Assembly: GCF_037042905.1 (NCBI RefSeq)
Contig: NC_087261.1
Span: 13,640,001-13,704,000 of the forward strand
Direction of reading: 5' to 3'
DNA from: Lytechinus pictus
Lineage: Eukaryota
DNA: 64,000 nucleotides
The position numbers and the translations under genes were made by a program. This document shows positions 5,201 through 61,169 of the stretch, piece by piece; position 1 is the stretch's first letter; each line of letters starts with the position of its first letter. The notes beneath the pieces are model-generated. The model worked only from the letters and a program-made list of their open reading frames with translations. It ran no database searches and was not told the origin of the DNA.

Positions 5201-8200
5201 TGCTAACTTTGTTTGGTTCATACCATCCTTCTCTCTGATATTAGCTGCAGCTCAAGGCCCTGGTCAGGAGGTATCCCCACTCCTAGCAGCAGCTGCATCA
5301 GCTGGAGTAGGGTCAGGACCAGCTCCTGGACCTACATATGGTAAGATCAAAGGCTCGATCACAGGGCCAACTTCAGATCCAGTAGCAGATTCTAATAGGA
5401 ACGAATATCAGGACCAGTTGAGACAACAGGTAAAACTCACTTCATGCAAAATCATTTTTAAAACATTGATTCACCCAAGACACAAGTTGATGCGTAGGTA
5501 CTGTCGTAAGGTATCTGATTTCATTCTGGATGAATAAAAAAAATATATAATTCATACAAAGATTTGACAATCAAGATATGTAATCCCATTGAGAAAATAA
5601 GGTAATAAAGCATATCAGAGAATACAAAAAATATAATAACATGATAATTATTTAGCAACTTGTTGAACAAACTTGATATCAAATATATGCCCAATGATCA
5701 ACTTTAGCATCATTATTTGAAAGGAACTAGCATGTTTATGACTGGTATTTAATTTCTTTTTTCCACCCTGAAACATACATTAAAAAAAATGAATGAGTAT
5801 AAACTGCAAATGGAATTTTCTTTTTGAAGAATCATACAAGAAGAACTTCTTCGGAATAAGGGGAATTAAGAAAAAAAAATGTTGCTATCCTTTGTTCTGG
5901 AGATTAATAATTTGTCTTTCTTTTCCTATGTACATATTGTTTATGTATCTCTTGAATGTCTGCAGGTTGAAGAAAAGAAGAGGAGAGAGTTGGAAGAGAA
6001 GGAGAAGATAAGACTGGAAGAAGAAAAAGAAGAGAGAAGGCTCGCAGCACAGAGAGAGCGCATCCAGAGGGAATATGACGCAGAGTTAGAGAGAAAGAAA
6101 CAGAAAGAAGAAGTGGTTAGTGACTTCATTCTTCATTTCAAAACTTATATTTAGACTTATTGGGAATGCCCCATAAGTCTAAATATAAGAAACTTGCGAT
6201 CAATCGCAAGTCTATTTTTGGTCCCTAAATTGATCATACTGTACATCTTGCAATTACATGTAAATTTGGGCTTGATTACTGGGTCCCGTCTGACAAAGAG
6301 TTACGATCGATCCAAACAATCATAACTCTAAGGAAATCCATCAGTGTCATAATTTTTTATACAGGAAATTTGCAAAATGTCCTTTGTAAACAAAGGAGAA
6401 CACACCAAATTGTCAAGAAATCAATGAATTTATGGATATACAATGTACATTCATATCTAGATTTTTTTCTGAACAAATATGCATTTTATATGTTGACTTT
6501 GTTGGCTTTCCATAGTTGCGATTGATCAGATCAATGGCAACTCTTTGTAAGACGGGGCTCTGATCTGCTTCTTGCATTAAGGAGTGTTCTCTGATTGGCT
6601 GCAGCTAAAATTGATCTATCACTTGTAAAATTCCAACAGAATATTTGCAAATGATTGCTAATATTTTTTTTGCAACACCCCATACTGAAGTGGTACAGCA
6701 TAAATTTTCTTTTTGTGCATTTCAGTCTTTTAATGAAAGCACTCAGGATGAATAAGGTCCAGATACCGATTTTGACATGAATTGATTCATGGTGGTGAAC
6801 GTAGTTCTACTGTTGCTGTGGCAAAAGAATGAAACAAGGTTCCCATTAGATTGAGATCTGAAACTTCTCGTCATAGATTTAAGAAACAGTTGAAACTAAC
6901 TTGTATCCAGTATAGATGTACATGTAGCTTCTAAGTGTTGTAAATTGATCTACAGTGTAAACGCTATGATATAGTGTGCTATGTATAGCGTTCCTAAATG
7001 CCTTATTTATTATTATTATTACTATTATTATGGTGACCTAAAAGAGAATGCTAGTTCTACCTCACTATCCTTACGTTATTATTTTTCTATTTTTGCAGCA
7101 AAGAAAACAGAAGGAGGATTTGGAGAAACAGCTAGAGGATAAGAGAAAAGAATCAGAGGCAAAGAAGAAGGAAGCCAACGAGAAAAGAAGGAGAGAAGCG
7201 GAAGAGAAACTCAGACATAGAGATATAAATCATAATGTTAATAACCTTTCGGTGAGTTACACATTTTCAATGCTAAATGTATCTGTATTTTATGCTTGTT
7301 CAAGACAAATTACATGTTTAACAAGTTAACGTACTTACAAAAAAAAATTGTCCCGAACCGCAGGACAAACGTGTGGCACCATTGAACATTACCTGTGACT
7401 GTAGCATGCTATACATGTAATGGATAACATTTAGTGATGATATAAAAAGGTCTCTGGACTTTAACCGCAAGGTACAAGGTTCAAATCCCATTACAGCACT
7501 GGTGACCTTTGGTTAATTGTTTATCTACATTTGCCACTCTCCATCCAGGTTTAGTAAATCAGTGACCAGTAGGAACAAATTCTTAGAATGATAGAGCACC
7601 TTATCAATGTAGCTGTGTTGAAAGCAGGGTAACAGTATGCAGCACTTAGAAACACTGCATGAAGCACTATATAACTCTTGAACATTATTATTAATATTAT
7701 TACTATTGTTGTTGCTGTTTCTATTATTATTGTAATTATTATGTTATTATAAAACCATTACAATGCCGTGATTTGTCTGTGAAACTTTGGACCAAGTTTT
7801 CAGGCAGAAGGATATGATACATGTTAAAGGCACAAGTGGGGCTATTTGTTTCGCAGTATCTGAATACTGTTAGTAATGTTCATACACTCATTACATCGTA
7901 TCTAAAGGATGCTCATAGCAATTTTATTTTCACCTCTGTAACATACATGTTCTTGTTGCATTATTTTATATTCCTTAGTTACCAAGAGGATCATCCCCAC
8001 CAATCCCAGCACTTAGAACCAAGGAACCAGAGGTATGTAATAAAATTCCTTCAATTGTGTGGATTCACAATACGGTGCGCCATCTATTGGTTGCAGTGGA
8101 CAGGCCAAAACTCGCAATGCCTTTATTATGGGAAAAAATTCTACATCTGTTGCGTTGCGTGCTAGTGCATGTACATGTATGCAATTATGCTAGTCGACTT

Positions 8201-11200
8201 AGCTCAACCGGCTTGCATACAATGTTTGCTAGGATCCAGGAGAATGGAGAGAAATTCGTTGCGAATTTCTTTCCGAAATTAAGAACATTTTCGGTGAATT
8301 CTTCCTCCGCTTTTGCCAAATCGTTTTCATTTTTTAAGCATCTCGGTCACATTACATTACACTAGCACTGTGCACTGCCAGTGCCTGCGCGCCCGCTGTC
8401 GATCCCGAAGTTAGAAATTTGGCCTGTTGGCTGGAACCAATAGATGGCGCACCATATTGTGAATCCACCAAATTGAATTATAGATACCTGTACGTTCTCG
8501 ATTCATTCCATTCAATTAAATTTATTAATTTTGATGATATTTAAATGTGTCCATAATTTAGCACCTTCTTACCTTCAGGTAAACTTAACCAATCCAAATG
8601 ATGTACATAAACATCATACCAGACAGAGAGACAGTGGATATTTACGCGTGCCCAAGTTTCGCACTGATTGTTATAAGTGTAGTCCAATCGTATCTTCAAT
8701 ATTTAAATGGAATAAGCTTGATAATTCAATTAGAACAGCTCCTTCTGTCATTTCATTTAAGAGAATGTTTAAAAGAACTTGTAATTTATAAATAACTTGG
8801 GGAACATCCACTGTTGTGCTTATTTTGTGTTAGCATGACCTTGATGATTTGGTGTATATTATCAGTATTTTCAAGATGTCCTTCTTAATTAATTTGATTT
8901 ATTGATATTTTATTATACGTCAAACGAGTGCCCGTCTGCGTTTTGTTTGCTGCTAAGTTTGTTAATGTTTCGTTTTACATTCAAATCCTAATGTGAATCT
9001 TAATGATGTAACATTCTGTACATACGTTATGCATTTTGTAAATATGTTTATTGTTATTCAGGGCCTCATGGAAGACCACTACTTATTGGTGAATGGGCTA
9101 CCCTGTCAAAATATCAGAAATAAATAAATAAATGAATTAACATTCTCAATGAAAAAAAGTAAAGTATATTCAAGTATAAATTCTTTTACATTCTACAATT
9201 AGTGCAGTTCAATTCAATGTCTTTACAATCTCCATAAAAAGGGAAAAGTACGTACAAGTATGTACATTCTACAATGAATTGAATTTAATTCATTTACATC
9301 CTCAATAAAAAAAACAGGAAGATTTTGATGTACATGAAATAGAAAAACGGAGCTTTGTCACAGCATACAAAACGTGTTGATGATAATGATTTTTTGTAAA
9401 AAGGAGAGTAAAAAAACATGTTATCTTCTGCTTTTCATTATTTCAGCGCAGAGTGAGACTATGGCCTACATGTACATGTATAAAACATGTTTTTCTGTAT
9501 TTGCGTGATCCAAATAAACTGCCCATCTTAAACCTACAAGTATGATTCTGCATATAGGTGCCAGTGTCTTACTTAAATGCAATCAATATTTCCTGCTTTC
9601 CATTATTGTAGAGCAGAGTGAGACTATGGCTTATAATTTAAACTAGACTTCTGAATACGGCTACAGAGTTCAAGATTTCTTTGCAATATCCAAATAAACA
9701 CTGTGGCCCATATTCTGAAGTCGGGGTTCAACTCAGGATTAAAGTTGTGGTTTAAGTATGGATAGCCAATTGTTACATAAATCACTAACAGGAAGATATC
9801 ATATTTCAACTCATTTGGCTCTTAAATCATTCATAATTGTCTAGGAAGTATAAATAGATGAATGTCTTCACCATTGAAGAATCGGGAAAGAGCACAGTAA
9901 ATATAAGAAACATACAACTTAATAAAAATTTTGACACTCTTGGCTTCCCATAATTTTAGCACAGAGTTAGACCATGGTGTAAGTTAAACCTGACCTCAGA
10001 ATACGGGCCTGTATATCCAAACCTATACATATAGATGTTGAGGTTTTATTTTGATGTCATTAATATTCATTTCAGTTACAGAGAATATCGTCTCCACCCA
10101 TCCCAACTCATCAAAAGAAAGAAGACAGAGAAACGAAGAGGCAACCTCCAGAGCCAGCCAGAAGGGTAATTCAAACATTCTCCACACATTGTTAAATTCC
10201 ATTCCATTAATAAATGGGAGTTGACCCTGAGGTCAGTTGGTTTCAAAACAAGTGGGACAAAATGAGAGAAAATATAATTGGAAGCTTGACAACAAACCAT
10301 TAAAAGATAACAGAGTTATAAATATTTAATGTCTTCATTTTCTGATGCCAGATATGAGCAGCGCTCCCATGTGTCACACCGGACGTAGCTTGAAGATTCA
10401 TAACTGTTCGATTCTATATGGATTTTGGTCAACCCTCTTTAATTTGTCTGTTTTATTCAAACCAATTTGATGTCAGCGTTAGCATCCAATTAAATTTCAT
10501 TCCATATTTCATGGCAGTAGGAATATTGAGCATTTGATTGTGATCTTTTAGTACAATATCCCAACTCCTATCATGTCTATGCTATTTAATAAGTATATAC
10601 ATATACACTGTAATGCAACATGTCACCATGATGAATGTCCATAATCTTTTATGTACTGAAGCATTGGAATATATATAAAGAAAATGCAAATCACTCACAT
10701 TTCTTAGAACAAGAAGATGCTATTTTTTGTAATTTTATTTTATTTTTTGCATATTGCATACTGGAATGTTCTTAGGTTACATTTCATACTTCGCATGTTA
10801 ATTAAAAAAGCATGAGTTGCTGTTCCTTTCAATTTTTTATTTGAATTGCAATTTTCCAATGTTCATTTCATGGTTTAGTTTCATTTGAATGCTTGCAGTT
10901 TGTTACTGTTGATATTTTGAAACATACTACGTGCATGCTTACAAATATTCACAGCATCATTGTTTCGCTTGCTAACCTTCCTTTATAAATCAGAGTACAC
11001 AGTCCCCACCCGTTCCTACTCTACAAAAGAAAGAGAAAAAGGTTGTTGATCCAGACTCAAAGGTATGATTCTGTGGTGTGTACAGTGTAGAGCTTCCTCC
11101 TTCTATTTTTATCCTCTTCAGACTCACTACATATCTTTTGTCCCTCTGTTCTTCCTTTTATCAATCCCACTCTTCCTCCACTGACCCATCCCTCCTTCAT

Positions 11201-14200
11201 TCCTTATGTTCATCNNNNNNNNNNNNNNNNNNNNNNNNNNNNNNNNNNNNNNNNNNNNNNNNNNNNNNNNNNNNNNNNNNNNNNNNNNNNNNNNNNNNNN
11301 NNNNNNNNNNNNNNNNNNNNNNNNNNNNNNNNNNNNNNNNNNNNNNNNNNNNNNNNNNNNNNNNNNNNNNNNNNNNNNNNNNNNNNNNNNNNNNNNNNNN
11401 NNNNNNNNNNNNNNNNNNNNNNNNNNNNNNNNNNNNNNNNNNNNNNNNNNNNNNNNNNNNNNNNNNNNNNNNNNNNNNNNNNNNNNNNNNNNNNNNNNNN
11501 NNNNNNNNNNNNNNNNNNNNNNNNNNNNNNNNNNNNNNNNNNNNNNNNNNNNNNNNNNNNNNNNNNNNNNNNNNNNNNNNNNNNNNNNNNNNNNNNNNNN
11601 NNNNNNNNNNNNNNNNNNNNNNNNNNNNNNNNNNNNNNNNNNNNNNNNNNNNNNNNNNCATCTCATTGTCCATTTCATTATGTATTTTTTTATCTGTATA
11701 TGAATGCGTAAAGCTCCATGCAGCATTATACACAGTACATGTACATATTTATAGCTTTGTTATCAGTAACTTAATTTTACCGACATGTGGAGTACTTGTG
11801 AACTAATAAAATGCATGATAAATCAGTCCATTAGAATGAAATATTTACCACTCTGCTCTCCATTTATTCTTTTGAAATGAAATCCAATTTATATTTATCG
11901 TCATGCATCAATGTACGGCAACTACATGTATACATGTACATGTACACTGTTTGTAATTTGAATCGTACAGATCTTTCAGCTTATTCAACTTGCACATTTT
12001 ATATTTATTTTCATGAATGTCTACGAAGTACATGTAGATCTGAGTATACTTATCTTCTTTCCTCTTGTCCCTTTTAAATATTTATACGTATATAGTGTGG
12101 TTAATATTTGTGCAAAATGATGCATACACAAGTCTACTCGCATGATTCTAGAGATCTTCCTTATAGCCATGTTCCAGTCACAAAGTTTTGTTTAAGATAT
12201 CTTTGAATATTCAGACTGTAATACTCTGTATAATTACGTTACATAATTTATCTATGCGAAGCTAATTTTCATGTACCTTAGCCCTTGCGTTTTATTTTCC
12301 ACTATATGTGCACATTCCTCTTTCTGCTATGGCATGCTTACAATGTAAAAGGAGAACGGGGATAGGACTGATAGGTCTGAAAGGAGAGGCTCTCGCAGAC
12401 AGTCCCTTGCACCCGAACAGGGTGACGGTGATCTTCAGAAAACCCCTCGGAAGGGACCATCACGAAACGAAGAGGGGGAAAGAACGAAACGATCACGTAG
12501 ACCTCGTAAAGGACCGCCTCCCGAGGACGATGTTGATGAGAATGATGAGGGAGAGATATCCCCAGATAAGACCGGTCTGGAGGAAGAAGGAGCGCAAACA
12601 AAGAGGTCCCGCAGACCTCGTAAAGAACGCCCTCCTGGCGATGATGCTGATGATGGGGAAATTTCCCCAGCTAAAACAGACAGGACAAGACGATCACGCA
12701 GGCCTCGGAAAGAGCCGACACCCAATGACGATGAAGAACCGCAGCGAGACGAAGAAACCCCGCGGGATGAGGAAAGAATAGATGGAGTGGAAACATCGCG
12801 GAAACCTCGTAAAAGGCGCCCTCGTCCAAAACAAGGAGAAGATCCTTCAAGTGAGAAGCCTTCGGATCTTCGAAGGAAGTCTGTCCAGGAAAGGGCACGG
12901 ATCTTCCCACCAAAGGAAATCCCTCAGGAACATGCTGAACTTGATCCACTTGATAAGTTACGGAACCCCACCACTATACATGTACCTGTCAAGTCCAATC
13001 ACCCTAGGGTCATACCCGATGAGAATGCTAGACTCAGTCCTATGGACAAGCTAAGAACACACTATCCAGATGAACCACAAAAGCCAGTAAGATCTAGCTA
13101 GTCCTCCTGACTCCTAACCTGTATTCTAATACTAACAGCTTCCTTTCTTGGAAGTTCACACATGGAATAGCAACAAGGATCTACACACGCACACACAATT
13201 AAATTCTTACTAGAGAGTATTAACAGTGTTTTATTAATACACATACCAGTTGACGTGTTATGCAAGATTATATTGCAATACATAATATTAAACTTGCTTC
13301 CCCAGTAGTTCCCATGTCCTGCACATGTGCATGAACTGTTCAGGCATAAAACAGTCTACATGTAATAGGATTTTTTGAATATTACCCAAGTTTGAAACAG
13401 CGTCATCTTAGTGTAGATACTAACCATCGCACTTGCTGTGTGATCAAAGTAAAACGTTTCTTGTCTCATCAATACTTAACAAGCAGGGACGATGCTGCAA
13501 TATCTTGATAATGTAGGGCAAGACGATATACATTTTCTTGTAAAGGGGATATTATTTCCCAATTGAAACAGAGAAATATAGGGTTACATGTACATGTAGC
13601 TACATGACCCAGAAATCACTTTTTAATACTCTTCTTTCTTCCTTTTCTTCTAATTATATTTCACCGCTTGGTTATCATAGAGGGGTGTAGTCTCCCTCCC
13701 CACCCTATTGTGCAGCCCCAGTCGACACAGATCGGCTTCATACCTGACCCTCCCTATATAGAGTCATTATTCCCTCAATACACTGTATCTTAACCAGTTT
13801 GATTTTACTAATCATATTGCATCAACTAATGAACTTATTTGATTATCTTATTACTGAAACTAGGAAATGTTAGATAAATGATAGCAATGAATTAATTATC
13901 ATAGTGAATTGAACAATAAGAATTCTGCAGATCTATGTAAAAATGGTATCTAGAAAGAGAGAAAACAAAAACAGAACTTTGTAATGGCCTACAGTTGTAC
14001 ATCTCTGTCATATTGATTTTTTTGGGGGAAAATGCAACTTACATGTGTAGCCCTACAAATTAGGCTCTGATCGACCACTTCAGTAGTTTTCATATTCAAA
14101 TTATCAATATGCTGTGTCAATGCCCATTGAAGGATAATAGCAAGTGGATTATTTCCTTTGCAATTAGTTCTAGTGTTGTTTTTTTCACAATATTTGTTGT

Positions 14201-17200
14201 CATTGCCATATTAAATATGCTGTTTGGATGGCCATTCAATGTTAAATTTTAAGTGGAGCCATTTACAATAGTGTAGTTCCATTGGTACTTTTTGATACAT
14301 TATTTTTTTATCACTACCTACTTCATTATATTCCTCTTTCTGTCCCAGGACTCCTTTCTTGATTCTGGGCTATTCCCAGAAACTAAGGGCGGCTTTGAAG
14401 CCGCTTATAAAAAGCAACGCGTAAGTAGCGCCCTCTACATGTATGTCCCTCTTATTTGAAGGACAAACAATGTTTTAGAAGTGATCACCTGAGTGTTTTG
14501 AAAGTGATTTTGATTACACTGCACCCATGGAAAGTGTACTTGATATCAAGTTTGTACAATTTTGGTTAACCTGTTGACTACTTAATTCTGGTATTCCCAT
14601 TGACTTTGCACAGGGACCACCCAATTCCCATAGCCAATGTGTTAAGTTTCTTTTTTACTATTTTTTTTTACCAGAGACGGCATTGTTTTGGGGTTTTCCT
14701 TTGAGGCCAAGGATTACATTTGTCAACATCAAAATTATTTTCTGCTTGGTCTAATCTTAACCTTGCTTTATGTTTCATAACATGCTGTGAAGGTGCATAG
14801 TTGACTTCCGTGTGGTTAAAATGACTGATGTTTTCTAGAGTGTGTGCTGTACATGTATGTCGGTTTGCATAAAGCGGATGTAGACAAGCATACATTAAAT
14901 ACTTGGCCTTGTGGAACCTCCCTGTTGTTTTACTTACTGTTATTAGCACCAAATACCTGTCTTCATCCAAACTAAAATATACACTCTAGAAAACATCACA
15001 GTTTCTGGGAGCCATGATGGTGTTATTATTATTTTTTTTGGGGGGGTGGGGGGGGGAAGGTCACAGATGCAGTGTGATTTAATAATGATAATAATAATAC
15101 TCAATATTTATAACACGCTTTTCCCACATGGCCCAAAGTGCTCACAATTTCAGTTTTACTAATTTATACAAACAAAAAAATCAGAATGACATATCAACAC
15201 GTTTATTTAACACATTTATTGTAATCTAAAATGATATTGTTCTTTAAGCTCCAGAAGGTTACACATTATAAAAATTTTCATATATGTAGAACTAGTCTTG
15301 TAATTCCAAAACATTGTTATCTTTATTCTAGAATAGTCATGGTTATAACCATGATCAAAATCTTATCTTCTCTGTGATAGATATAGTATTACTGTATTTC
15401 ACAAATAAATCTGTATGGGGGGATTTTCTCCTTTTATTATAAACCTTTTGTTTGCATGAAGTACATGGTTATGGTTATGCTGTAAGTTTTTCATGGGTAC
15501 TTGTTAGTGTTTGGAGTTGTTTTATTCACTCTCAAAGCTTCCTTTATTTAATCTGATTTAGTTCATGTGGTACACCATCATTGTGTGTTTTAGTCACCCC
15601 TTGCTTATTACACAAACTGTACATGTAGTTGCTTGGAAAAATATTTTAATTGTTTTGGTTGTCTGATGGTTTGCTGCACTGCACTATTTTCTTGTTGATT
15701 GCACACAATTTAGTGAGTGGATTTGTTTTCCTATTAAGCACACTATCTTTTTAAACCCCTTTGTGTAACACTTCAAGTTTATTATTGAGTTCCCATTTTC
15801 TTTGTCTTTCATTTGACACTTTTCTAGTTCCTCAAGAATGTTGTTATTAGTAGTTTCTTTTGGAGTTTTCCTAAAGCACATTTCTGACACCCCTTTGTGT
15901 TTTATACACTTCAAGTTTTTTTATGAGTTCCCATTTTCCCACCTTTTATTTGTCCCTGTTCCACCAGTGTTGTTTTGAAGAGTTTCTTTTGGAGTTTGCA
16001 TTAAGCACTAATATATTCTGTTGATGGAATATAATCTTTGTATAACACTTTCTCTAATGAGTTCTGTCTCTCTTCATAGATTTGTCACTATTTCAGTTAC
16101 ACCAGTGTTGTTTTGAATCCTTTCTTTTGGAGTTTGCCTGATGCACAATTGTGTATTCATCATTGTAGTATAATCTTTTGATGACTAAACAAGACATTGC
16201 TCCTCATCCCATGCATTCTTCACTGAAGTACCTGGTCGACTGGCTCCGGGAATTAGACCCCGATCTTGTCGTCTATGCTGCCGCCCTTGCCGAGAATGGG
16301 TACAAGACGTGGAACACGATTCGTCGACTGAAGCGAGGCACGCTTCTCGAGCTCTGCCCGGACATTAAGCACGGTCACATCGAGGCAATCCTCCATGAGG
16401 TTAACCGTGGGCAAACTCCCCGTTCTAAGGTACTATCATAAAAGATAAACCTGTGTTTAAAGACCACATACATGTAAGCTCCCCATCCTAATTATGTTAA
16501 CCTGTCTATTATGACCCTTCATGAGGTAAATACTGATCAGACAACACTTTTCTGCAGTTCTATAATAGTTAAACCTACATGTATATGAGAGTTACATTTG
16601 ACAGGCTACCCATTCCAAGGCCATACAGTACTGACCATGTGCATGTAAATGTATATGTGGTCACATTGAATCTATCTGCTCTTTTGGGTCAGTAGATGTG
16701 ACAAAAATGAGTGGCAGATGAATTCAGGAGGTACATGTAGAAGATCATCTGTTCAGTCACCCCTCCTGCAACCCCTTGATGTGATACCCAGTCCCCTCTT
16801 TCTCCATGCAAGATGTACACTATAGAACGAGAGATTATCCGAACGAATCAAGACATGCATGTACATTGTACACGTTACGATGTGAATGTTTTAAAGCAAT
16901 TAGAAATGATGAGCAAATGCTTTTACTTTCCGTCAATTTCATGCAACCGTCAGAAGCCTCCGACAAGGCCTCAGGTGAGGTCTCCGGATAGTTTATCAGA
17001 GCAGGAATTAGACATCGCAGACATTGAATCAGTAAGCGTTCTTCATCTTTCATAATATTGCTAGAGATTAGACCCTCTACCTTGTGTCTCATCTTAACTA
17101 CATGTATTTATTTTTGTGCATGTATGTGTATATTCACGCTCAACAAGGCAAATTGCTCTTTGTTCTTTTATGTTATGTTATCACCTTTAATGCTATTTTC

Positions 17201-20200
17201 TATAACCATGTTACATGTATATGTCATCATTTTTTACTTGACTTATATGTACATGTATGTGTTTATGAAGAATGAAATAAAATCAATTCAGTTCATAAAA
17301 TCGATTCATTTACTGCCAGGGCTCACATGGCCCCAAGCTACTGTATGTACGTCGTACATGTATGCTTGTTAAAAGTAAATTAAATGCAATTTTTAAACAA
17401 CAAAAGCAATAACCTGTATAGGCAAGAACTACTATTGATCAAAAGTGTGGTTAAAAAAAGAGTGTGTTTCTCTTTTTACACTTCAGTGCTGCTTCAAATG
17501 TAATCTTGATATTCCATATTATTATCATTGTTGGGTTTAGACGTAGATGTAGATGGCACCGATGGTTGCAAAGCTATTAAAAAAATATGCCTACTTGAAT
17601 TGGAGTTGCATGGAAATATGTTGTTCTTTTTGTGTATAGCATAAATGCAAGTACATGACTGTCTATCTACATTTCTTTCCAAACAAATAATTGTACTTGA
17701 TTCCCATAGTCTAAAACCAGGCCAGCCCCTATTAGAAGGAGAGAGAAACAGAGAAGAGTAAGATTGTGTGTGATGACACGATTTGTAATTCATTAACACT
17801 CCCACCGGTATTTTGCACAGATTGAAGAGTCTCCCCCTTTTATTCATATCTTCACAAAGTGTTACTATGTGTTTGAACTGTCACTTGTTCCATTACCACT
17901 ATTGACTAACCCTAAAAGCGCCCCCCCCCCCACGACATTTTTCATGATAAATCAGCAGCGTGGATGTTTGCAGTGAGACGTTTCATAGCCTCTGTCTTTC
18001 AAGCCTCCTCAAACTTTTGTTGTCGCGATCAACAGCCAAGATTTTTTTTAAGCCACCCCCCCCCCCCCAGTCATTCCAGCCTCCTAATTTACATGTATTT
18101 CCCTAGTCTATCGACGGTTAAAGGTATTTGCTAACATTGATTTGACTTTTTAAAAATCTGAGCTGCGAGGTCCCACTTTTCACCTGCACCTGTGATATGT
18201 TACAAAAATGAAGCCCAGAAAAAATCGCGTCCGAAAATCATTATAAAGTGCTTCAAAAAAGTGAAATATAAAGTGACCGGAAATACCATCTTAATTTCAT
18301 CCATACACTTATGTGTTCTATTATTATCGGCACGATAGAAATTACACAAAACCATCAATTATAACGTATATCGAAAGAATTTCTTTCGATTTTTTTTGTT
18401 GTTTTAGAGTTTTTAGGTTGACAGAAAGGCATTCATGTACATATTTCATCTCTCCTTTGATATTTTTTAAATTACATGTCTACAACCTTAGCATATGCCT
18501 TAAATCTACAGTATGGTACTCTTGTCTTTTGATTGCCTCTTTGTCCACTTGTGCATGTAATACCCCTTGGTCCAATACCACATTACTCATGCCACCTTTT
18601 TTGTATTGAGTGCCTATTGAACTACACCCACTTCCAGTTTGCACCATTCTTTCAATTGATGCTAATTGGTCTAGTTCCAACTTAATAGTTCATTACCACT
18701 TATTCAAAGTCACTTTAGCAATCGGTCTATACCCGATTGGTCCAATACCACTTTGTTTATACCACCCTCACTCTTTCTATTGAATGTCACTTGGTCTAAA
18801 CCCACTTGGTCCACTGCCACTGTATCTTGGCCACTTTGTCTATTGGTCCCACTTGGTCCAAATCATTTTATCATCATCACTCAATATGTTGAATGCCATT
18901 GTGTAACAAGTTTTAAAACCACTTTCTGGACATGTATGTGTATCACAGACTTTTATTGATTATAGCATGTACATTATTTCATTTTACTCGGTCCATTCCA
19001 ACTGTTAAGATGTCATTTCGTCCATTGAGTGCACTTCACTCAATTGGCACTTGGTCCAATTCCACATTATCTGTACCCGTGGATGACTCCTGATATTATC
19101 CCTCATATATTCCAATGGTTTGATCTACAAGATTCCACCTGAAACAAAAGTTTTTTATTTTTTTCCCCCCGCATTTGTTAGATAATAAATGCACTTGTAC
19201 TACAATCTTTATAGAGAAGCACAAATAGTACAATATAGCTCTTTTGTTTGATACCAAATTTGTTAAGAGAGGATGAATATATTTTTTAATTGATAGATTT
19301 TAAAACGATTCTGGAAAATGGACAACTAATATGTAGAATTGCCAACTTGGTGTATGCAGTCTCATTACTGGAACTGTATCTTCCTGGTTAATTATCTATG
19401 ATGATGTAGTATTTTCCCTCGATTCATATTTGATGGAATTATTTTGTGTTCACAGCTCGAAGATATCAGTCCTAGGAATGGGAGATACTCAGTAAGTGAA
19501 GATTGTCTTGAAGTAAATTCTTCCAAAAGTCATACAAAAATCGTACGTGGAAGGTGATGATAATGTAACGATGATCCCTAATGTCGACAGTGATTTGGGA
19601 ATAAAATCAATGAAGAAAGGGTGGGGAAGTGACCGGGGCTTGTATCCTTGAATACTTTCTTGAATAAGCATGCAAGTACATGTACATGTACATGTATCTT
19701 TAGGGGCCCGTTGCAGAAAGAGTTGCGATCAAACGCAACTCAAAAAATCTTGCGCAACTTGATTTTCAGCCAATGAAGCACCCGTCTTCGGGACTTGCGT
19801 TGATATTTTGACTTGCGTTTAAACACAACTCTTTCTGCAACAGGTCCCTGAACTGATACTTATTGAGATGGAAAATGTAACAGGATTGCATTTACTGTCA
19901 GCAAATTGTTTCAATTATTTTTGCCACCCAAGTTACCAAAAGTTTGTGTAGTCTGTTTATGAATCCTCTGCTGTACAGGCTAAACTTTATATAGTAGGAT
20001 ATTTTAGGATGATAGGATCATTGAAATATGTTTGATTTAGAAGAAAAATTTGATTTGGAAGATATAGACAATGCCTGCCTAGCATACATTTCTAATCTAA
20101 AAAATGGCGTCCAGTTAGAATATAGTAATAGACAGAATTTCTTAATCAAGTTATCATTAATGTCCCTAATCTACCCATTGGATCTGATGTGGAATTACCT

Positions 20201-23200
20201 TAAGGTTTGATACAGTACTTGGAGGTGTAAAATCTACCGTTGTAACTCCAGAGAAGGATGATAGAGTGAGACACACACAGACAAAGACAGAGACACAATT
20301 TAGTACTATCGGAAAGGCAGCATTGGATAATTTCTCTCAAAGTGTCCAGTTGCAAGCGGCACCTTCATTGGAGTTAATACTCTATGAGGTTCTTTATGTT
20401 TCATCATGAATGAGTCCTCATTTAAAATATGTTCTCTAAGATTATTTTTTTTCATTGAACTTATTTAAACTTTATTTGTTCATCAAAGGAAAGCCCACCT
20501 GGAAACAGCTTTGTTGATTTCTTGGTCAATGTCTCTAAAGAAGTAAGAAAACAAAGATTTCCTTTCCTATTTTATTAACAGACAATCATTTGCTGATAGA
20601 TATTGAAGTAAAAATCCAACAAAATAAATGAATCTCAGACAGCTTTTAGGCATTAATTCTTTTTGTTATGTACAGTACACCTCACGTCCTGAACTTTCCA
20701 TCTAGTGCAGTCGGTTGTTTTTTTTCCACAGATTTGAATTAAAATAGTAAAATGGAGCAATCACAAGGAAATACAGATTCAAGCAACATACATGTATATG
20801 GCACTTTGGTAATTAGATTGAAAATTTAATTGAAATTATTGTAATAGTAAATTATTGAATATAGGTTACATGCAGTTCAGATTGATCATTGATAAGTGCC
20901 ATTACGTGTAGCTCGAATATATTTACATTTGCATTTACCTTTACATTGCTAGTAATATAACTGCGATGAAAGTACAACCGAATGCTTACTTTACGGGACA
21001 TATGTCAAATAATTGCTTCCATCCATTGTAATCTTCTGTTCAGTCTGAAATGTACAAGAAAGCTCAGCGGTTACAGAATAAGCTTCAGCGTGATGGGCAT
21101 ATGCAGGTACTTTGCTTTTAGTTAATGTTTATTTGATCATTATAATAATAATAACAATTTGCTGTGCCCTCACATCAGTAGTTCCAATTATGCCAGAGAG
21201 TATACAGGCCTAATGTATACCCTACATGTACATGTACAGGTATAAGGCAGAATGAAAAAAAAAATGTTGTTACTGGTATAAGATTTATTTTGTCAGGGAA
21301 TAGTGTTCATGAATATTCATGAGTATAAATTGTAGGGATATTAACTAATTGTACAGCACTGCTAACTCTCAGATCATCTTACTGCATCATGGCTAAACCC
21401 ACTTGGTCTACTCTCAATTTGATCTAATTACTGTTTGGTCCAACCGTCACTTAGTCTAATAACTTACTTAGTTTTGCACTTAAGCACTTAGTATTTAATA
21501 AAAAAAGTTTGGTTCATATCAGCTCATCTTGTCATCATATAGGCTACATGTTTTCAGACCTAGTACATGTAGATATTAGATGAATTTGTTAGGCCCTAAA
21601 TGGAAATTAGACAAAATTGCATAATGGCAATTAGACCAAATGGTTAGTAGACTGGGAATAGACCATGTTGGATGAAAGCAAACAGAAAGTACACAAAGTG
21701 GGTGTATAGACCAAGTGGCAATTTACATTCAAGTATACATGTATGTGAGTTGTTTTGGGCACTCGTAATAGAATGTTCTGGGTTCACTCTTCATGCAGTT
21801 CAGGCATCTCCACTCACGTTCCTTTTGCTGAATTAAAGAAAGTGAAACGTTGAAATATATTTAGACATGGAACCATGGCATTGTGCGAGACGTCATACGT
21901 TATGTATGAGATGCATGTACATTGTATTATGATAGACTGTTATGAGAGCATGTGGTATATTTGATGCAGGAATCACAAGTATGATGTATAAGACTAGCCA
22001 TGGCTACATAAGATAATTAACCAATAGGATGCAAGGATTTCAGTAGCTTGTAACATTTCCAAATGAAAATAACTGACAAACTGTATCATGAAATGCCCCG
22101 GAAGTATGATTTTACAGGCGTTAAGTAAATCCTATACATAAATTTTACACAAGTTGAACTTGCTAAATGTCTGTCTGCTTTTTGTCTACATGTATTATAC
22201 TTGCACAAATTTCATGGTACATGTGATTGCCCCTCTTTTTCTATTGATTGCTGTTGCACCTCATTAACCATTTCCATGCGTACTTCGCACCAATGCACAC
22301 TTGATGCCATGCGAATTTCGCATTTTACTCGCAAACAATTCATTGTTTCCCTCCCTGAAAATAATTCAGCACGGAGGGGTTCATGGCCCAGCGGTTGAAC
22401 CAGAGTTCAACCAGGATCCTCTTTCTTTCACAGTCCTTTTCATAATGTAAAGCTCATTCAGGCATGCTGACAGAAAGCTCAGCTCGTCATTTATTCCATG
22501 TAAATAGTTAGTGAGACAAAAAAGGTGGCATTCCCCCCAGATTATTTTCATAGATTATATACTGTACAGTGTCTGTGTCAGAACAATGTACACGAAATGT
22601 TGCTCAGCTCTGTCGCCTCATAGTTGAATGAGCCTTGAGCCAGTTTTCGCTTACCCTTAATATTCATGTACATGTATGCTAGATTTCCCAAGTGTAATTT
22701 GTCAATTTTGTGGAAGGACTTTGGATACTCGAGGATTTATTGGTTTGTTTCTGTATTTTTTTTGTTTAAAATACTGTAACTAAAAATCAGTTTATCACAT
22801 GGGATGAGGTGCAAATTATTACCTTTATGAATTGCATTGAAACAATTTAGTGTCAGTTTTAAGGGATTATTAGTACTTGTAGACAACAAACTGGAACAGG
22901 GGGCTGTTTCATAAAGCTGTTCGTAAGTTAAGAGTGACTTTAAGAACGACTGATGAACCTGTCTTACGCGCTAAACCTTCGCCAATGGTGTACCATTTAC
23001 CAAAAGAAATTATCACCAGTCGTTCTTAAAGTTGCTCTTATCTTACGAACAGCTTTATGAAACACCCACCAGGTGTGTTTTTACCCTCAGGCTGATATTA
23101 GACCCTCTCAAAAACAAACTTTTCAACTTATTATGATAGTGTATTGTTCATTTGTTAAAGTTTTTTTCATGTGGACACTTGTTATTTGATATATCACCCT

Positions 23201-26200
23201 TGTCTTTAAGATCATGACTTGTTACAACCCTTAACTTTGCGTTACCTGTATAACCAATCAACAATGGTGACCAGTGTTGTCACCGTGCTGTAGGCACCTA
23301 TGGGTACTTCGCTCTGTTCAAAATTTCTGACCGGCCCATACAGTATCCAAAATCAAAGCTTGGATCAGTATTGGCTCTTTCATCCTGTAATTCTTTGTAT
23401 CGAGCCAAAGCCGTAATCATACTGTACATGTATATCTGGGCCCGGTCTCCCAAAGAGTTTTTGTTGATCCGGTCAAGTACAGCTATGGAAAGCCAGCAAC
23501 GCTAACGTCTATTAAATGAATGTTCAAAATGTTTTCTAGATACCAGTATGATGTATATTCATTCATTTATTGTTGTCTTGACAATCTAGCGTGCTCCTCT
23601 TTGTTTTCAAATTGACATGGTGCAAAATTCATGTCAGAAAAATTGTGATATTGATGGCTTCCATTTGCATGTAGTTGATGTGAATAGAGGGGATCACAAC
23701 ATTTTGTAAGACTGGACCCTAAAATTCATAATAAGGATTAATATTTCTCTCTGTTTTATCTCTACAAGGATGATGCTGACTTTCCGAGCACGTCAGAGAG
23801 AAGTTCCTCGCCCCCAGTACCTGCCGTATCAACCAAGGAACGTGGTGGACCCAAGGATGATACCAACGTGATGGGGGCACTGTCCGCTATGAGGGTTCAA
23901 TTGGCTTACGAACAGCAAAGGGTACAGAGCCAACTAGACAAGCATAGAGATGTGAGTGATTGTCATTCTTGATTGATACAATTTATTTAGTGACAAATTT
24001 AAAATAAAGGCCTTTGTTGGGTGTGCCTCTAATATCTTCAAGAAATTGGTTATTTTGTTTGCCACCATCACATGCAGTATGATTCCTCCAATCTAATGCC
24101 ATAGGCTGTATGATTAATAATTAATAATAATAATTGGCATTTATATAGCGCTTTATCAATCTACGACTGTTCAAAGCGCTTCACAATTATTATTACCCGG
24201 TCACTGGATTCATAGCATTCCAAGCAGCCTGTTAGGCGCAAACTTGCTAAACCAACCACAATGACGGTTGTTTCCTACCGGTACCCAATTAGCACCTGGG
24301 TGAGAATGGCAAAGTGTGGATTGACGCCTTGCCAAAGGGCGCTAGGCCATGGTGGGATTCGAACACACGACCCTCTGATTACAAGGCGAGAGTCAGAACC
24401 GCTACACCACGGCGCTTGTACTTGAGAAGAGGGTGTCCACTGATTACAAGAAGCATTTTTTTTTCAATCCTATAATAAAGTCCCGTAACCCCCAAACTCA
24501 TAACTTAAAAGAATACTAAAGACCACTCTTGTCAGCCCTGAGTAAGATTCCTGGCAGAGGACTTCAGGAAAAACAACTACAAGATAGTACTGTAGTACTT
24601 ATGGACACAAAGAGATCTTTATAATCCACTGCCATAGGCTGCTCACAGGTCGCATAAAGCATATTTTTGATAATTTTAAGAAGGTTTTTATTGTGTTTTT
24701 CATCCTATAGTAGAGTATGGTCCACACAATCCGTTGCCAAAGGCTGCTCATGCACCATGTAAAGGGAGCCCATAATTCTCAAGAAACATTACATACAGTA
24801 AGATCCATACAATACTTTGCCAAATGCTGCTCATTTTCTTTGTAAAGGGTGGCCTTAATAATCTCATTATTTTTCACCTTCTAATATAGTATGACCCATA
24901 CAATCCGTTGCCAAAGGCAGCTCACGCTCCCCGTAGAGGGAGCCCTCAGGTTGATGTCTTTGAGTTGGCCAGACACAAGGGGAGTGTAGCCGTTATGAGA
25001 AACGCGACGCATCAAGCGGCAGAAGACTTTGATGGGCTGAAAAACAGAAGTAAGTTGAGAACATGCATGATGCGAAAGTAGTTTAAGCTTTGTTGAGGGA
25101 TTTATAAAAGGGGGGCTGTTGCAGTAGTCGCTGTTTGCTATTGCACATCCTACATGTACTGTACTTCACTAAATAGTATGATTATATGTGATTTTCAGCT
25201 TATTAGGTTTATGCCCTTTATGTAGATGTTATTATGACATACTCGGTAGATGTAACTTAAGTTTTGGTTGACCCAAAATCTACATGTAGCAGAATTCAAA
25301 ACATATACATGTAGCTTTAGATATATGATACTATTGTAACAATTAATCATGATATTGAAGACTTTCTTTTGTCTTGAATTAAGTTGTTAACTTCTAATCT
25401 GTATCCCGGAAGTGGTTTGTGGTACACCGTGTGGTGAGTCCTACAAGGACTAAGAAAAGTGTATAGAGGTAGAAGTGAAATGGAGAGGCAAGAAATTAGG
25501 AAGTTTTTATTTTGGAAATGAGTTTAATCCTTAAGAATAAAATGTATGTTTAGAAAAACAAGAACATCAGTCTTTTTTTACCCTGACAACCTTTCAAAAG
25601 GTGGCTCACGAACGAGACAAAAAGTGAAGGAGAGTTATCCTCACAAACCCAACTCGGATGTCACCCTTGAGGCTCAACAGAGGGCGCTGTTGAGAGCACA
25701 GCAAGAGAAATTAGAAGCAATGCGGAAAGGTTAGCCCCTTGCATGCATGCTTTTCAAAGCTATCCATTCTAGTTGAGCTTTGCTGGGACTGACTGGGCTT
25801 CTTTCTCTATTGTTTTTCTCATTTGTGGCTTTAATAGGAATTGTTAAAGAGAGGCATTCATTCTGTTTTACAGGGTGATGTGTTTATGGGCGGAAAGGTT
25901 TGCCCCTTGCATGCATGCTTTTCAAAGCTATCCATTCTAGTTGAGCTTTGCTGGGACCGACTGGGCTTCTTTCTCTATTGTTTTTCTCATTTGTGGCTTT
26001 AATAGGAATTGTTGAAGAGAGGCATTCATTCTGTTTTACAGGGTGATGTGTTCATGGGCAGGTTTCACAAATCTAAAAATTGACGGACCTCCAAGCGAAA
26101 TGTGTCAGATCATAACTCCTGTTTCAATGCAAGCATTAGGAAAAATGAATCCTCAAAATACCAATTATATGTTTTGGTGTGAGAAATTTGACTCTTTGGT

Positions 26201-27903
26201 GATGTGTAAAATACATATTACAATACAATTGTACATGTACATTTGCTGTAAAATTATTATTGAAATTCAGCCTTCTAATATAGGATGTGCACTGATAATC
26301 TATGCGAAATACTGTGAATAGGTTTATTCTTGTTTTCAGCTGACAGCACCATTAACAAAAATATATATTTTTAACTCTTAATTTTAACGTAACTTGAATT
26401 TGGGGCGCATGCCAAACTGCCCAATTAAAGAATGCCTCTCTTTAATAGAAAAAAATGCCTCTCTTATAATTCAACAATTCATTCATTACTACACTAAGAT
26501 ATAGTATATTCATCTTTTTATCACCCTTCTGCAATAAACCATACTATTCATTTATCTTCCTCCTTGTGCGTTCAGTCTATCATGCATATTTTCGTTCAGA
26601 GGATAATATGAATATCAACAATGAGTATAAAAGTCCTGAACTTACCGCTCGGCAACCTCAACGTAAGACCTGAATTCCATCAGATATTCCGCACCAATGA
26701 TTGTGTGTTTGCACCTTCTGAAAATCTGACCTTTGAGATACATGTATTTATCTGCAAATGTTCTAACTTTGACTTGTGTGTTTCATAATACATTTGCTCG
26801 GGTTGTATCCTTATTGAGACAACATTCATTTGTGTTAATCCTGGGAGATGTGTCGACGAAAGTGCAATTGACAGTCGACACCATGCATTAACAACGGTGC
26901 TTCTCTTCAAAGTGTTTACAAAATCCATTTAACCACTACAGTTTTTGTGGGATCTCTCTTTAGTTCTATTGATTTATTCTTATTCTATTGATTAATCTTT
27001 ATTCTTATCTGCATTTAATTTTTTCAATTCTCCCTCCCTGCCCATGCTATTTTGTATGTCTTTTGAAGTTGTTGACATACAAGCATCATGAAAATGAGCA
27101 TCACTGGGGCATGGACATGTACATACATGTATGTTCTTAAATGCATGCATGAATGGCATACATGTAATTTGAAAGGGTTCCTTTTCACACTGCTAGTAAT
27201 GTACATGCTTTAATTTCCACACATTAAATTCTATACATGTAGGGTGAATCAAAATTACTTTCTGCAAATCATATCTTTTAAAGCTTAAGATGTACATACC
27301 TCCTTTTTCAATTAATTTGCATATAATTTACAAATGCTGCCCTCTATTTCAGTACTGCAAACTGGATATTTAACCTCCTAAAAGCAGAACAGTAGATTTT
27401 AAGTACTTTGCCATGAAAAGTTTAATTTAATTTATTTATATGTCAATTTCAATGAATGTGGCACCATTCTCTCTGTTTATAGAGGCTGCTTGAATCAACA
27501 ACGCCAAACAAATCTACCATTTCAATTTTCTTTGACATCCGGTTTAACATTTTGTCTCCTTGTCTGCTGACATTAATTAATCATTAATGTTATTAAACAA
27601 ATTCAAATCATAAGAAGCCTAACTTAGTGATTCAGTGATATTTTTACTCATTCGTGTGCACTGGTTTTCTATACTAACTTCCATTTGATTGGTTTTATCT
27701 CTCTCTTTCTCCCCCTCCCTCCCCACTCTCTATCACTTATTTATTCTGCATCACTGGCTCTCTCCCTCTTTGTCTGTCTTTCACTTTTAACAGTCTATGG
27801 AAAAGGTAAACTTATATTTTCTCAATTGAAGTGTAATGTATAGTACTCAATGTAGTTACTCTACTCCACTGTATTCATCTTGTAATATTATGCTTTACCT
27901 AAC

Positions 27904-61137: not shown

Positions 61138-61169
<32 letters not shown>

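What the first reader, a model, noticed from the sequence alone, without database searches (positions are those of the whole stretch)
7979..21106. Array of ten frame-neutral (phase 0-0) exons inserted into CSPP1: a possible combinatorial splicing module
Seen: between the conserved coiled-coil exon (ends 7251) and the conserved SPPVPA/C-terminal exon (starts 23769) lie ten AG/GT-bounded, stop-free exons of 54, 90, 69, 735, 72, 261 (or 201), 78, 48, 36 and 63 nt. All are multiples of three and phase 0-0, totalling 502 codons. Knowledge (recalled): the equivalent linker in human CSPP1 is only a few dozen residues between two SPxVPA motifs. Inference: any subset could be included without frameshift, so this may be a lineage-specific tunable insert that yields many isoforms of a ciliary/spindle microtubule protein, e.g. 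in sperm versus embryo.
Basis: partly seen in the sequence, partly recalled or inferred. Interest (0 to 1): 0.8.

Follow-up and report, generated by a model that had tools for sequence, protein, structure and literature searches.

The report
Frame-neutral exon array in urchin CSPP1
A run of small exons in the sea urchin gene for the cilium and spindle protein CSPP1 is real, can be skipped without breaking the reading frame and is partly skipped in RNA, but it is an ancient, already annotated feature, not a new sea-urchin insert.

Summary
The window is Lytechinus pictus LOC129279908, annotated as CSPP1-like. The exons are real, with three corrections. The SAM-like exon is 201 nt (16229-16429), not 261. 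The total is 500 codons. The N gap at 11215-11658 lies inside the E3/E4 intron, and RNA contigs splice across it in frame.

All eleven exons belong to a run of 14 consecutive phase 0-0 exons (15 phase-0 introns).

RNA contigs show both E3->E4 (depth 15.3) and E3->E5 (depth 24.5), so the 735-nt exon is a true cassette. The 22 RefSeq isoforms I could examine give nine patterns in the array. Skipping occurs in two zones, E3-E5 and E8-E10. E1, E2, the SAM-like exon E6 and E7 are always kept.

The array is not lineage-specific. The same phase-0 array, large exon, SAM-like exon and ESPPG exon occur in four other echinoderm classes and in a hemichordate. They are absent from a crinoid.

Exons are under purifying selection (dN/dS 0.08-0.16).

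Verdict: a real, ordinary frame-preserving cassette array in a disordered linker, already annotated automatically. Free combinatorial use and tissue specificity were not shown. The scan's only earlier notes on this are three first-reader notes on this same window, none on other DNA.

The parts
5966..6115 (+). First exon of the phase 0-0 run (coiled-coil, EEKKRRE...), constitutive
   Evidence: Exact match to XP_063968706 residues 911-959; phase 0-0
7099..7251 (+). E0, coiled-coil exon, 153 nt, phase 0-0.
   Evidence: 95.4% identical to L. variegatus against 70.8% in the flanks
7979..8032 (+). E1, 54 nt, first SPPIP-motif mini-exon; present in all 22 isoforms examined
10076..10165 (+). E2, 90 nt, second SPPIP-motif exon; present in all current isoforms
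   Evidence: The loose end at 10993 in an RNA contig carries the end of E2, which shows the E2->E3 junction
10994..11062 (+). E3, 69 nt, SPPVP-motif exon; skipped together with E4 and E5 in RefSeq isoform X22
11215..11658 (.). Assembly gap (N), inside the E3/E4 intron
   Evidence: N run; RNA joint 11062->12352 across it; no extra residues between E3 and E4 in the L. variegatus or S. purpuratus proteins. Its letters were not looked up.
12352..13086 (+). E4, 735-nt cassette exon. The N-terminal part is charged, disordered and fast-evolving, with four RSRRPRK-type repeats. The last ~75 codons (12862-13086) hold a motif conserved as far as hemichordates
   Evidence: RNA joints E3->E4 (depth 15.3), E4->E5 (18.4) and the skipping joint E3->E5 (24.5); repeats; skipped in X20-X26; dN/dS 0.16 with in-frame indels; conserved motif; weakest acceptor of the array
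14349..14420 (+). E5, 72 nt; skipped together with E4 in X21, X22 and X25; conserved among echinoids only
16229..16429 (+). E6, 201 nt, SAM-fold domain exon; in every isoform examined
   Evidence: RNA joint 14420->16229 at depth 51.5. AF2 model has pLDDT 86-90 over the core. Foldseek PDB hits are almost all SAM domains, rmsd 1.2-1.5 A over 57-60 residues. The PDB profile search's top 20 hits, E 0.04-0.65 and none significant, are all SAM domains. 46-98% identical across Ambulacraria. No Pfam SAM hit
16954..17031 (+). E7, 78 nt, with a tandem (NAGNAG) acceptor at 16954/16957 that gives or removes one lysine
   Evidence: Loose ends at 16429 and 16952 prove the E6->E7 junction; X2 and X19 lack the K
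17710..17757 (+). E8, 48 nt; skipped with E9-E10 in L. pictus X25 and S. purpuratus X3
19456..19491 (+). E9, 36 nt; part of the E9-E9b-E10 block that is skipped as a unit
20489..20542 (+).
   Evidence: (100% identical to L. variegatus)
21044..21106 (+). E10, 63 nt, continues the helix; last exon of the skipped block
23769..23951 (+). E11, 183 nt, conserved SPPVPAV exon; the common acceptor for the E6, E7, E8 or E10 donors; last exon of the 0-0 run
16169..16228 (+). Rejected: the 60-nt upstream extension that would make the 261-nt exon
   Evidence: No RNA depth, and the contig starts at 16229; 2-nt indel and no AG in L. variegatus; in no RefSeq isoform
20758..20793 (+). Rejected: chance AG..GT stop-free 36-nt segment
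   Evidence: In no isoform; 61% identity with gaps and no AG/GT in L. variegatus

Best explanation
The region is the linker between the central coiled coil and the C-terminal part of the Lytechinus pictus CSPP1 orthologue. It is built from symmetric phase 0-0 exons, eleven of them inside a run of fourteen. The linker is mostly disordered. It carries three or four SPPxP mini-exon repeats that look like tandem exon duplicates. It also carries a large charged exon (E4) ending in a conserved peptide motif, a constitutive SAM-fold domain (E6) and a short conserved helix (E9b-E10).

Because every intron from 5429/5966 to 23951/24890 is phase 0, any exon skipping keeps the frame. Skipping is used in two zones on either side of the SAM-fold exon. 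In zone 1 the donors of E2 or E3 join the acceptors of E4, E5 or E6, which removes E4 alone, E4+E5 or E3-E5. In zone 2 the donors of E6, E7, E8 or E10 join the E11 acceptor, which removes E9-E10, E8-E10 or E7-E10.

Shown: the exon structure, the phases, the E4 cassette in RNA, purifying selection, and conservation of the architecture across Ambulacraria. Model-based (RefSeq Gnomon): the other skipping events and their combinations.

Inferred: each zone switches a deeply conserved peptide element on or off (the C-terminal motif of E4; the E9b-E10 helix). It also changes the length and charge of the spacer between the microtubule-acting part and the C-terminal targeting part of CSPP1. The SAM-fold domain stays constant.
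For: Identity: the window's exon translations match L. pictus XP_063968706 and its isoforms exactly, and the protein has a CSPP1_C Pfam domain with E=1e-18.

Phases: 15 consecutive phase-0 introns.

RNA: contigs of run X1 give GT..AG joints 11062->12352 (depth 15.3), 11062->14349 (24.5), 13086->14349 (18.4) and 14420->16229 (51.5). Loose ends prove E2->E3 and E6->E7. Intron depth is near zero.

Isoforms: 22 RefSeq isoforms give nine patterns in the array. S. purpuratus X1-X4 skip E9-10, E8-10 or E7-10. Acanthaster, Patiria and Antedon models also vary in the stretch before the E11 equivalent.

Conservation: exons are 91-100% identical to L. variegatus against 71-92% in the flanks, with AG/GT and length kept. 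dN/dS is 0.08 for the small exons and 0.16 for E4.

Architecture: the same 0-0 array with large exon, SAM-like exon and ESPPG exon is present in S. purpuratus, Patiria, Apostichopus and Ptychodera. The end of E4, E6 and E9b are conserved in all of them.

Fold: the AF2 model of residues 1000-1580 has 394 of 581 residues below pLDDT 50. The confident parts are the SAM core (85-93), an E9b-E10 helix (75-79) and the E11 helix. Foldseek confirms the SAM fold. E4 has the weakest acceptor, aaaag with 45% pyrimidines.
Against: Only one RNA data set (assembled Logan contigs of one run, tissue unknown) gave junctions. Its depths are assembler word depths, not read counts. The three raw-read runs had almost no reads on the gene.

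The zone 2 events, E3 and E5 skipping and every combination rest on Gnomon models, which enumerate combinations without long-read support. The E3->E6 joint was not seen in X1.

No functional data exist for the conserved motifs or the SAM-fold domain. Pfam's SAM models do not hit E6, and all sequence-level SAM matches are marginal (E 0.04 or worse).
Confidence: 0.7

Rival explanations
1. One reading: a lineage-specific, freely combinatorial insert in which any subset of exons is used to make many isoforms, for example in sperm versus embryo.
For: All exons are phase 0-0, so any subset is frame-preserving. RefSeq lists at least 26 isoforms of the gene, with nine patterns in the array. E4 skipping is seen in RNA.
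Against: The array is shared with four other echinoderm classes and a hemichordate. E1, E2, E6 and E7 are in every model, and skipping takes contiguous blocks only. Much of the isoform count comes from events outside the array. Tissue specificity was not tested.
Confidence: 0.08
2. The array is an essentially constitutive long linker. The skipped forms are splicing noise tolerated because symmetric exons do not break the frame, and they are multiplied by the annotation pipeline.
For: Gnomon enumerates combinations. Frame-preserving skipping escapes nonsense-mediated decay and so accumulates. Only one RNA data set was informative. L. variegatus has only two annotated isoforms, and they do not differ in the array.
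Against: In X1 the E4-skipping joint has more depth (24.5) than the inclusion joints (15.3 and 18.4). The same zone 2 block skipping is annotated independently in S. purpuratus, and similar variation in asteroids and a crinoid. The elements that are toggled are the most conserved parts of the linker.
Confidence: 0.2
3. The SAM-like exon and its neighbours belong to a separate gene nested in a CSPP1 intron and were wrongly strung into CSPP1.
For: SAM domains are not described in CSPP1 in the papers searched, and Pfam finds none.
Against: RNA contigs join E5->E6 and E6->E7. The domain sits at the same place in CSPP1 proteins of nine ambulacrarian species, within the same phase-0 array.
Confidence: 0.01

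Closest known systems
Mammalian CSPP1 isoforms CSPP-L and CSPP-S
   Same: Same gene family (CSPP1_C domain). Helical segments alternate with unstructured linkers. An in-frame internal deletion of 52 residues distinguishes the isoforms and changes microtubule binding and pausing (PMC9948759, read).
   Different: Here the alternative region lies between the coiled coil and the C-terminal part and spans up to about 340 residues in two zones. It includes a SAM-fold domain that is not described for the mammalian protein. No vertebrate sequence could be compared here.
Arrays of symmetric cassette exons that encode disordered linkers (for example the titin PEVK region, or tau and MAP4 repeat and projection-domain exons); recalled knowledge, not tested here
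   Same: Runs of same-phase exons, each a multiple of three, encode low-complexity or short-motif segments. Skipping tunes linker length and motif content without a frameshift. Repeated mini-exons arise by tandem duplication (here the SPPxP exons E1-E3).
   Different: This array is smaller. It holds a constitutive folded domain in the middle, and skipping is seen only as contiguous blocks.
SAM (sterile alpha motif) domains, for example Eph receptor and SARM1 SAM
   Same: The predicted five-helix bundle superposes on EphA5/SAMD5, EphB2 and SARM1 SAM at rmsd 1.2-1.5 A over 57-60 residues. The 20 best PDB profile hits, E 0.04-0.65 and none significant, are all SAM domains.
   Different: There is no Pfam SAM_1 or SAM_2 hit, and sequence matches are only marginal. 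Whether it oligomerises is unknown.
Mutually exclusive exon arrays of the Dscam type
   Same: Many isoforms from one locus through exon choice.
   Different: There are no clusters of paralogous alternative exons and no sign of mutual exclusion. The events here are cassette or block skipping.

Membership tests
CSPP1 orthologue | CSPP1 C-terminal domain (Pfam PF24578) downstream of long coiled coils | tested here: met
CSPP1 orthologue | Collinear similarity to CSPP1 of other phyla, including vertebrates | tested here: inconclusive
   Collinear with echinoderm and hemichordate CSPP1. No vertebrate or protostome sequence was retrieved: the exon-11 search gave 5 hits, and the four whose source was checked are echinoderm
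Frame-preserving cassette-exon array | Consecutive exons of the same phase, each a multiple of three | tested here: met
   14 consecutive 0-0 exons and 15 phase-0 introns; permutation p about 0.001
Frame-preserving cassette-exon array | Both inclusion and skipping junctions present in RNA | tested here: met
   For E4: E3->E4 at depth 15.3 and E3->E5 at 24.5 in the contigs of RNA run X1. For E3, E5 and E8-E10 the evidence is RefSeq models only
Frame-preserving cassette-exon array | Independent (combinatorial) choice among exons within single molecules | not testable with these tools
   This needs long reads. The models combine zone 1 and zone 2 choices (X23-X26), but Gnomon combinations are not observations
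SAM domain | Five-helix SAM fold | tested here: met
   AF2 pLDDT 86-90 over the core; nearly all of the top 50 Foldseek PDB hits are SAM domains, TM (target) 0.6-0.79 for single-domain entries
SAM domain | Match to the Pfam SAM_1 or SAM_2 profiles | tested here: not met
   No SAM family at E<=1. The profile search against PDB gives only marginal SAM hits, E 0.04-0.65
   The large exon, SAM-like exon and ESPPG exon are present in echinoids, a holothuroid, asteroids, an ophiuroid and Ptychodera. They are absent only from Antedon (tblastn blank)

The most novel reading that the evidence does not exclude
Ambulacrarian CSPP1 keeps an ancestral module that crinoids, and possibly vertebrates, have lost. 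The module is a SAM-fold domain flanked by two independently regulated cassette zones, each of which toggles a peptide element conserved for about 500 million years. On this reading, splice choice sets the oligomeric state, partner binding or localisation of this ciliary-tip and microtubule-lumen factor in a stage- or tissue-specific way.
Probability: 0.2. Interest if true: 0.5.

Novelty: new member of a known kind. Interest (0 to 1): 0.3.

Why it matters
CSPP1 is a Joubert-syndrome protein that stabilises microtubules from the lumen and acts at ciliary tips. Sea urchins are a classic system for cilia and spindles.

Knowing that the urchin protein carries a constitutive SAM-fold domain and two switchable conserved peptide elements gives concrete constructs to test: with and without E4, and with and without E9-E10. 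The gene is also a clean example of exon-phase blocks, a phase-1 run and a phase-0 run, conserved since the ambulacrarian ancestor.

It is not a new kind of mechanism. The exons and isoforms are already in RefSeq.

Tried and rejected
- The word-indexed homologue search with E4 alone gave one fragment from an unreadable ENA contig, and no DNA was held for it.
- The same search restricted to the SAM-like exon found only echinoids, so the range beyond Ambulacraria stays open.
- The exhaustive search with exon 11 gave five hits. The four whose source was checked are echinoderm, and no vertebrate CSPP1 came back.
- The raw-read RNA runs X20-X22 had almost no reads on the gene at the share that was read. 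Their reads fell on a repeat at about 15012-15155. No per-tissue inclusion could be computed.
- Pfam finds nothing in E4, E0 or E11 taken alone.
- No solved CSPP1 structure exists.
- Rfam finds no RNA family in 5000-26000.
- I searched the urchin loci for the RPIKP and DIYxRPxSK mini-exons of starfish, sea cucumber and hemichordate. None is present in readable sequence.
- Rejected: the 261-nt form of E6, the 20758-20793 candidate exon, and a nested SAM gene.
Full report
[quoted passage not shown] An exhaustive search with the exon at 23769 returned a 1816-residue protein. Cluster look-ups named it and listed isoforms X1-X26, of which 22 were available as sequences. The protein has a CSPP1_C Pfam domain with E=1e-18.

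**The observation.** Mapping isoform X1 onto the window gave the exact structure:
- E1 7979-8032 (54 nt)
- E2 10076-10165 (90)
- E3 10994-11062 (69)
- E4 12352-13086 (735)
- E5 14349-14420 (72)
- E6 16229-16429 (201)
- E7 16954-17031 (78)
- E8 17710-17757 (48)
- E9 19456-19491 (36)
- E9b 20489-20542 (54)
- E10 21044-21106 (63)

That makes eleven exons, 1500 nt and 500 codons. The 261-nt form is not used. The RNA contig starts at 16229 and there is no depth upstream of it. In L. variegatus the 60-nt extension has a 2-nt indel and no AG. One of these, 20758-20793, is not an exon.

**The gap.** The N run 11215-11658 lies in the E3/E4 intron. An RNA contig joins 11062 to 12352 with GT..AG ends. 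The L. variegatus and S. purpuratus proteins pass from E3 directly into E4. The coding sequence is therefore continuous and in frame across the gap.

**Phases.** All introns from 5429/5966 to 23951/24890 are phase 0. That is fifteen in a row, giving fourteen consecutive 0-0 exons: one coiled-coil exon, E0, the eleven array exons and E11. The other eleven introns in the window have phases 2,0,1,1 and 1,1,1,0,0,1,2. Shuffling phases within the gene gives p of about 0.001 for this window, and between less than 1e-5 and 2e-3 for the four orthologous genes.

- The three raw-read runs had almost no reads on the gene.
- The contigs of RNA run X1 gave joints 11062->12352 (E3->E4, depth 15.3), 11062->14349 (E3->E5, E4 skipped, depth 24.5), 13086->14349 (18.4) and 14420->16229 (51.5).
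- Loose ends carry the end of E2 before E3, and the start of E7 after E6.
- Intron bins were at or near zero, so this is RNA and not DNA.
- The short anchors of 23-25 nt at the E3 and E5 sides are what a de Bruijn assembler leaves at a splice branch.

By word depth, E4 is included in roughly 40% of molecules in that sample. This is an approximate figure from one sample of unknown tissue.

**Annotated isoforms.** Among 22 RefSeq isoforms the array shows nine patterns:
- full inclusion
- minus E9-E9b-E10
- minus E4
- minus E4+E5
- minus E3-E5
- minus E4 and minus E9-E10
- minus E4+E5 and minus E8-E10
- two further patterns that differ only by a one-codon NAGNAG choice at the E7 acceptor

E1, E2, E6 and E7 are in every model. 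Skipping is therefore block-wise, in two zones either side of E6. Much of the isoform count comes from other events elsewhere in the gene. These are Gnomon models: each intron normally has RNA-seq support, but the combinations do not.

**Conservation.**
- Against the L. variegatus locus, every exon keeps its AG/GT, its length and its frame. Identity is 91-100% in exons against 71-92% in the 200-nt flanks.
- dN/dS is 0.08 for the ten small exons pooled, 0.16 for E4 and 0.05 for the neighbouring conserved exons. E4 also has in-frame indels of 28 and 2 codons, one of them a repeat unit.
- Gene models mapped onto the loci of S. purpuratus, Patiria miniata, Apostichopus japonicus and Ptychodera flava show the same uninterrupted run of phase-0 exons. 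The order is the same: coiled-coil exons, SPPxP mini-exons, a large exon of 354-813 nt, a 201-210-nt SAM-like exon, several mini-exons including a 45-54-nt ESPPG...DFL...SKE exon, then the E11 equivalent.
- The crinoid Antedon has a shorter 0-0 run with four SPPxP-type exons. It has no large exon and no SAM-like exon, and tblastn of its locus is blank.
- Because a hemichordate has the module, the simplest reading is that it was present in the ambulacrarian ancestor and lost in the crinoid line.
- Per-exon identity across ten species shows that the last ~75 residues of E4, E6, E9b and E11 are conserved in all. The start of E4, E5, E7, E8, E9 and E10 are conserved only among echinoids.

**Alternative splicing in other species.**
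- S. purpuratus isoforms X1-X4 differ by E9-E10, E8-E10 or E7-E10.
- Acanthaster X1-X3 and several Patiria isoforms differ in the stretch between the SAM-like exon and the E11 equivalent.
- Patiria also varies just before and at the start of the large exon.
- Antedon varies in the 31 residues before E11.

These are independent annotations, but they are still models.

**What the parts are.**
- E6 folds with confidence (pLDDT 86-90) into five helices. Foldseek places it among Eph-receptor, SAMD5 and SARM1 SAM domains, with rmsd 1.2-1.5 A over 57-60 residues.
- A profile of nine orthologues gave no significant PDB match; the twenty best hits, at E 0.04-0.65, are all SAM domains. A language-model look-up also points to SAM clusters.
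- Pfam's SAM models do not hit, so I call it a SAM-fold domain and not a Pfam SAM member.
- A model of residues 1000-1580 is below pLDDT 50 for 394 of 581 residues. The confident parts are the SAM core, an E9b-E10 helix (75-79) and the E11 helix.
- E4 carries four RSRRPRK-type repeats and has the weakest acceptor of the array.

**Mechanism.**
- Shown: a phase-0 exon array in which skipping cannot break the frame, a real E4 cassette, and purifying selection on all the exons.
- Model-based: the other block skips.
- Inferred: the two zones toggle the two most conserved peptide elements of the linker and change spacer length and charge, around a constant SAM-fold domain.

In mammals an in-frame internal deletion of 52 residues between CSPP-L and CSPP-S already alters microtubule binding and pausing (PMC9948759). 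That makes such a role plausible, but it is not evidence for this region.

**Novelty.** The exons and isoforms are in RefSeq. No paper in the searchable library links CSPP1 to a SAM domain or treats the urchin gene. Symmetric cassette arrays in disordered linkers are a well-known kind. This is a new, well-conserved member of that kind, with a previously undescribed domain in it.

Noticed in passing
L001:22980-36177 (L. variegatus), with equivalents in L003 and L004; upstream of the window's start in L. pictus: The same gene has a second block of symmetric exons upstream: a run of 8-11 phase-1 introns (9 in Patiria, 11 in Ptychodera). In L. pictus the annotated 19-, 15- and 16-residue cassettes lie in the corresponding part of the protein.
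   Followed up: partly
window 25601-25729 and 26576-26662: Two further cassette exons downstream of the array (129 and 87 nt, both phase 1-1) are skipped in several RefSeq isoforms. An alternative C-terminal exon also changes the last ~20 residues.
   Followed up: partly
window 15012-15155 (intron E5/E6): A short segment has high RNA depth in all four runs. The reads run on into unlike sequence on both sides, so it is probably a piece of a repeat or of an abundant transcript from elsewhere. No Rfam family matches.
   Followed up: partly
window 61091-62368 (+): A 426-codon open frame has strong MGAT4 conserved-region and MGAT4 C-terminal domain matches (E=8e-70 and 5e-25). This is a neighbouring N-acetylglucosaminyltransferase IV-like gene or large exon.
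   Followed up: partly
window 48169-49719 and 57138-57752 (+): Two reverse-transcriptase (RVT_1) open-frame fragments lie between the CSPP1-like gene and the MGAT4-like gene. They are non-LTR retrotransposon remnants.
   Followed up: partly
window 13087-13101: If the E4 donor at 13086 is not used, the frame runs on for four codons to a stop. This is the sibling note's 'terminal exon' idea. RNA run X1 shows no depth beyond about 13190.
   Followed up: partly
P0040 (XP_054771947, earlier L. pictus model): An older RefSeq model of the same locus (1793 residues) lacks exact matches to E2, E4 and E8. It clusters with the L. variegatus protein and not with the current L. pictus isoforms.
   Followed up: no
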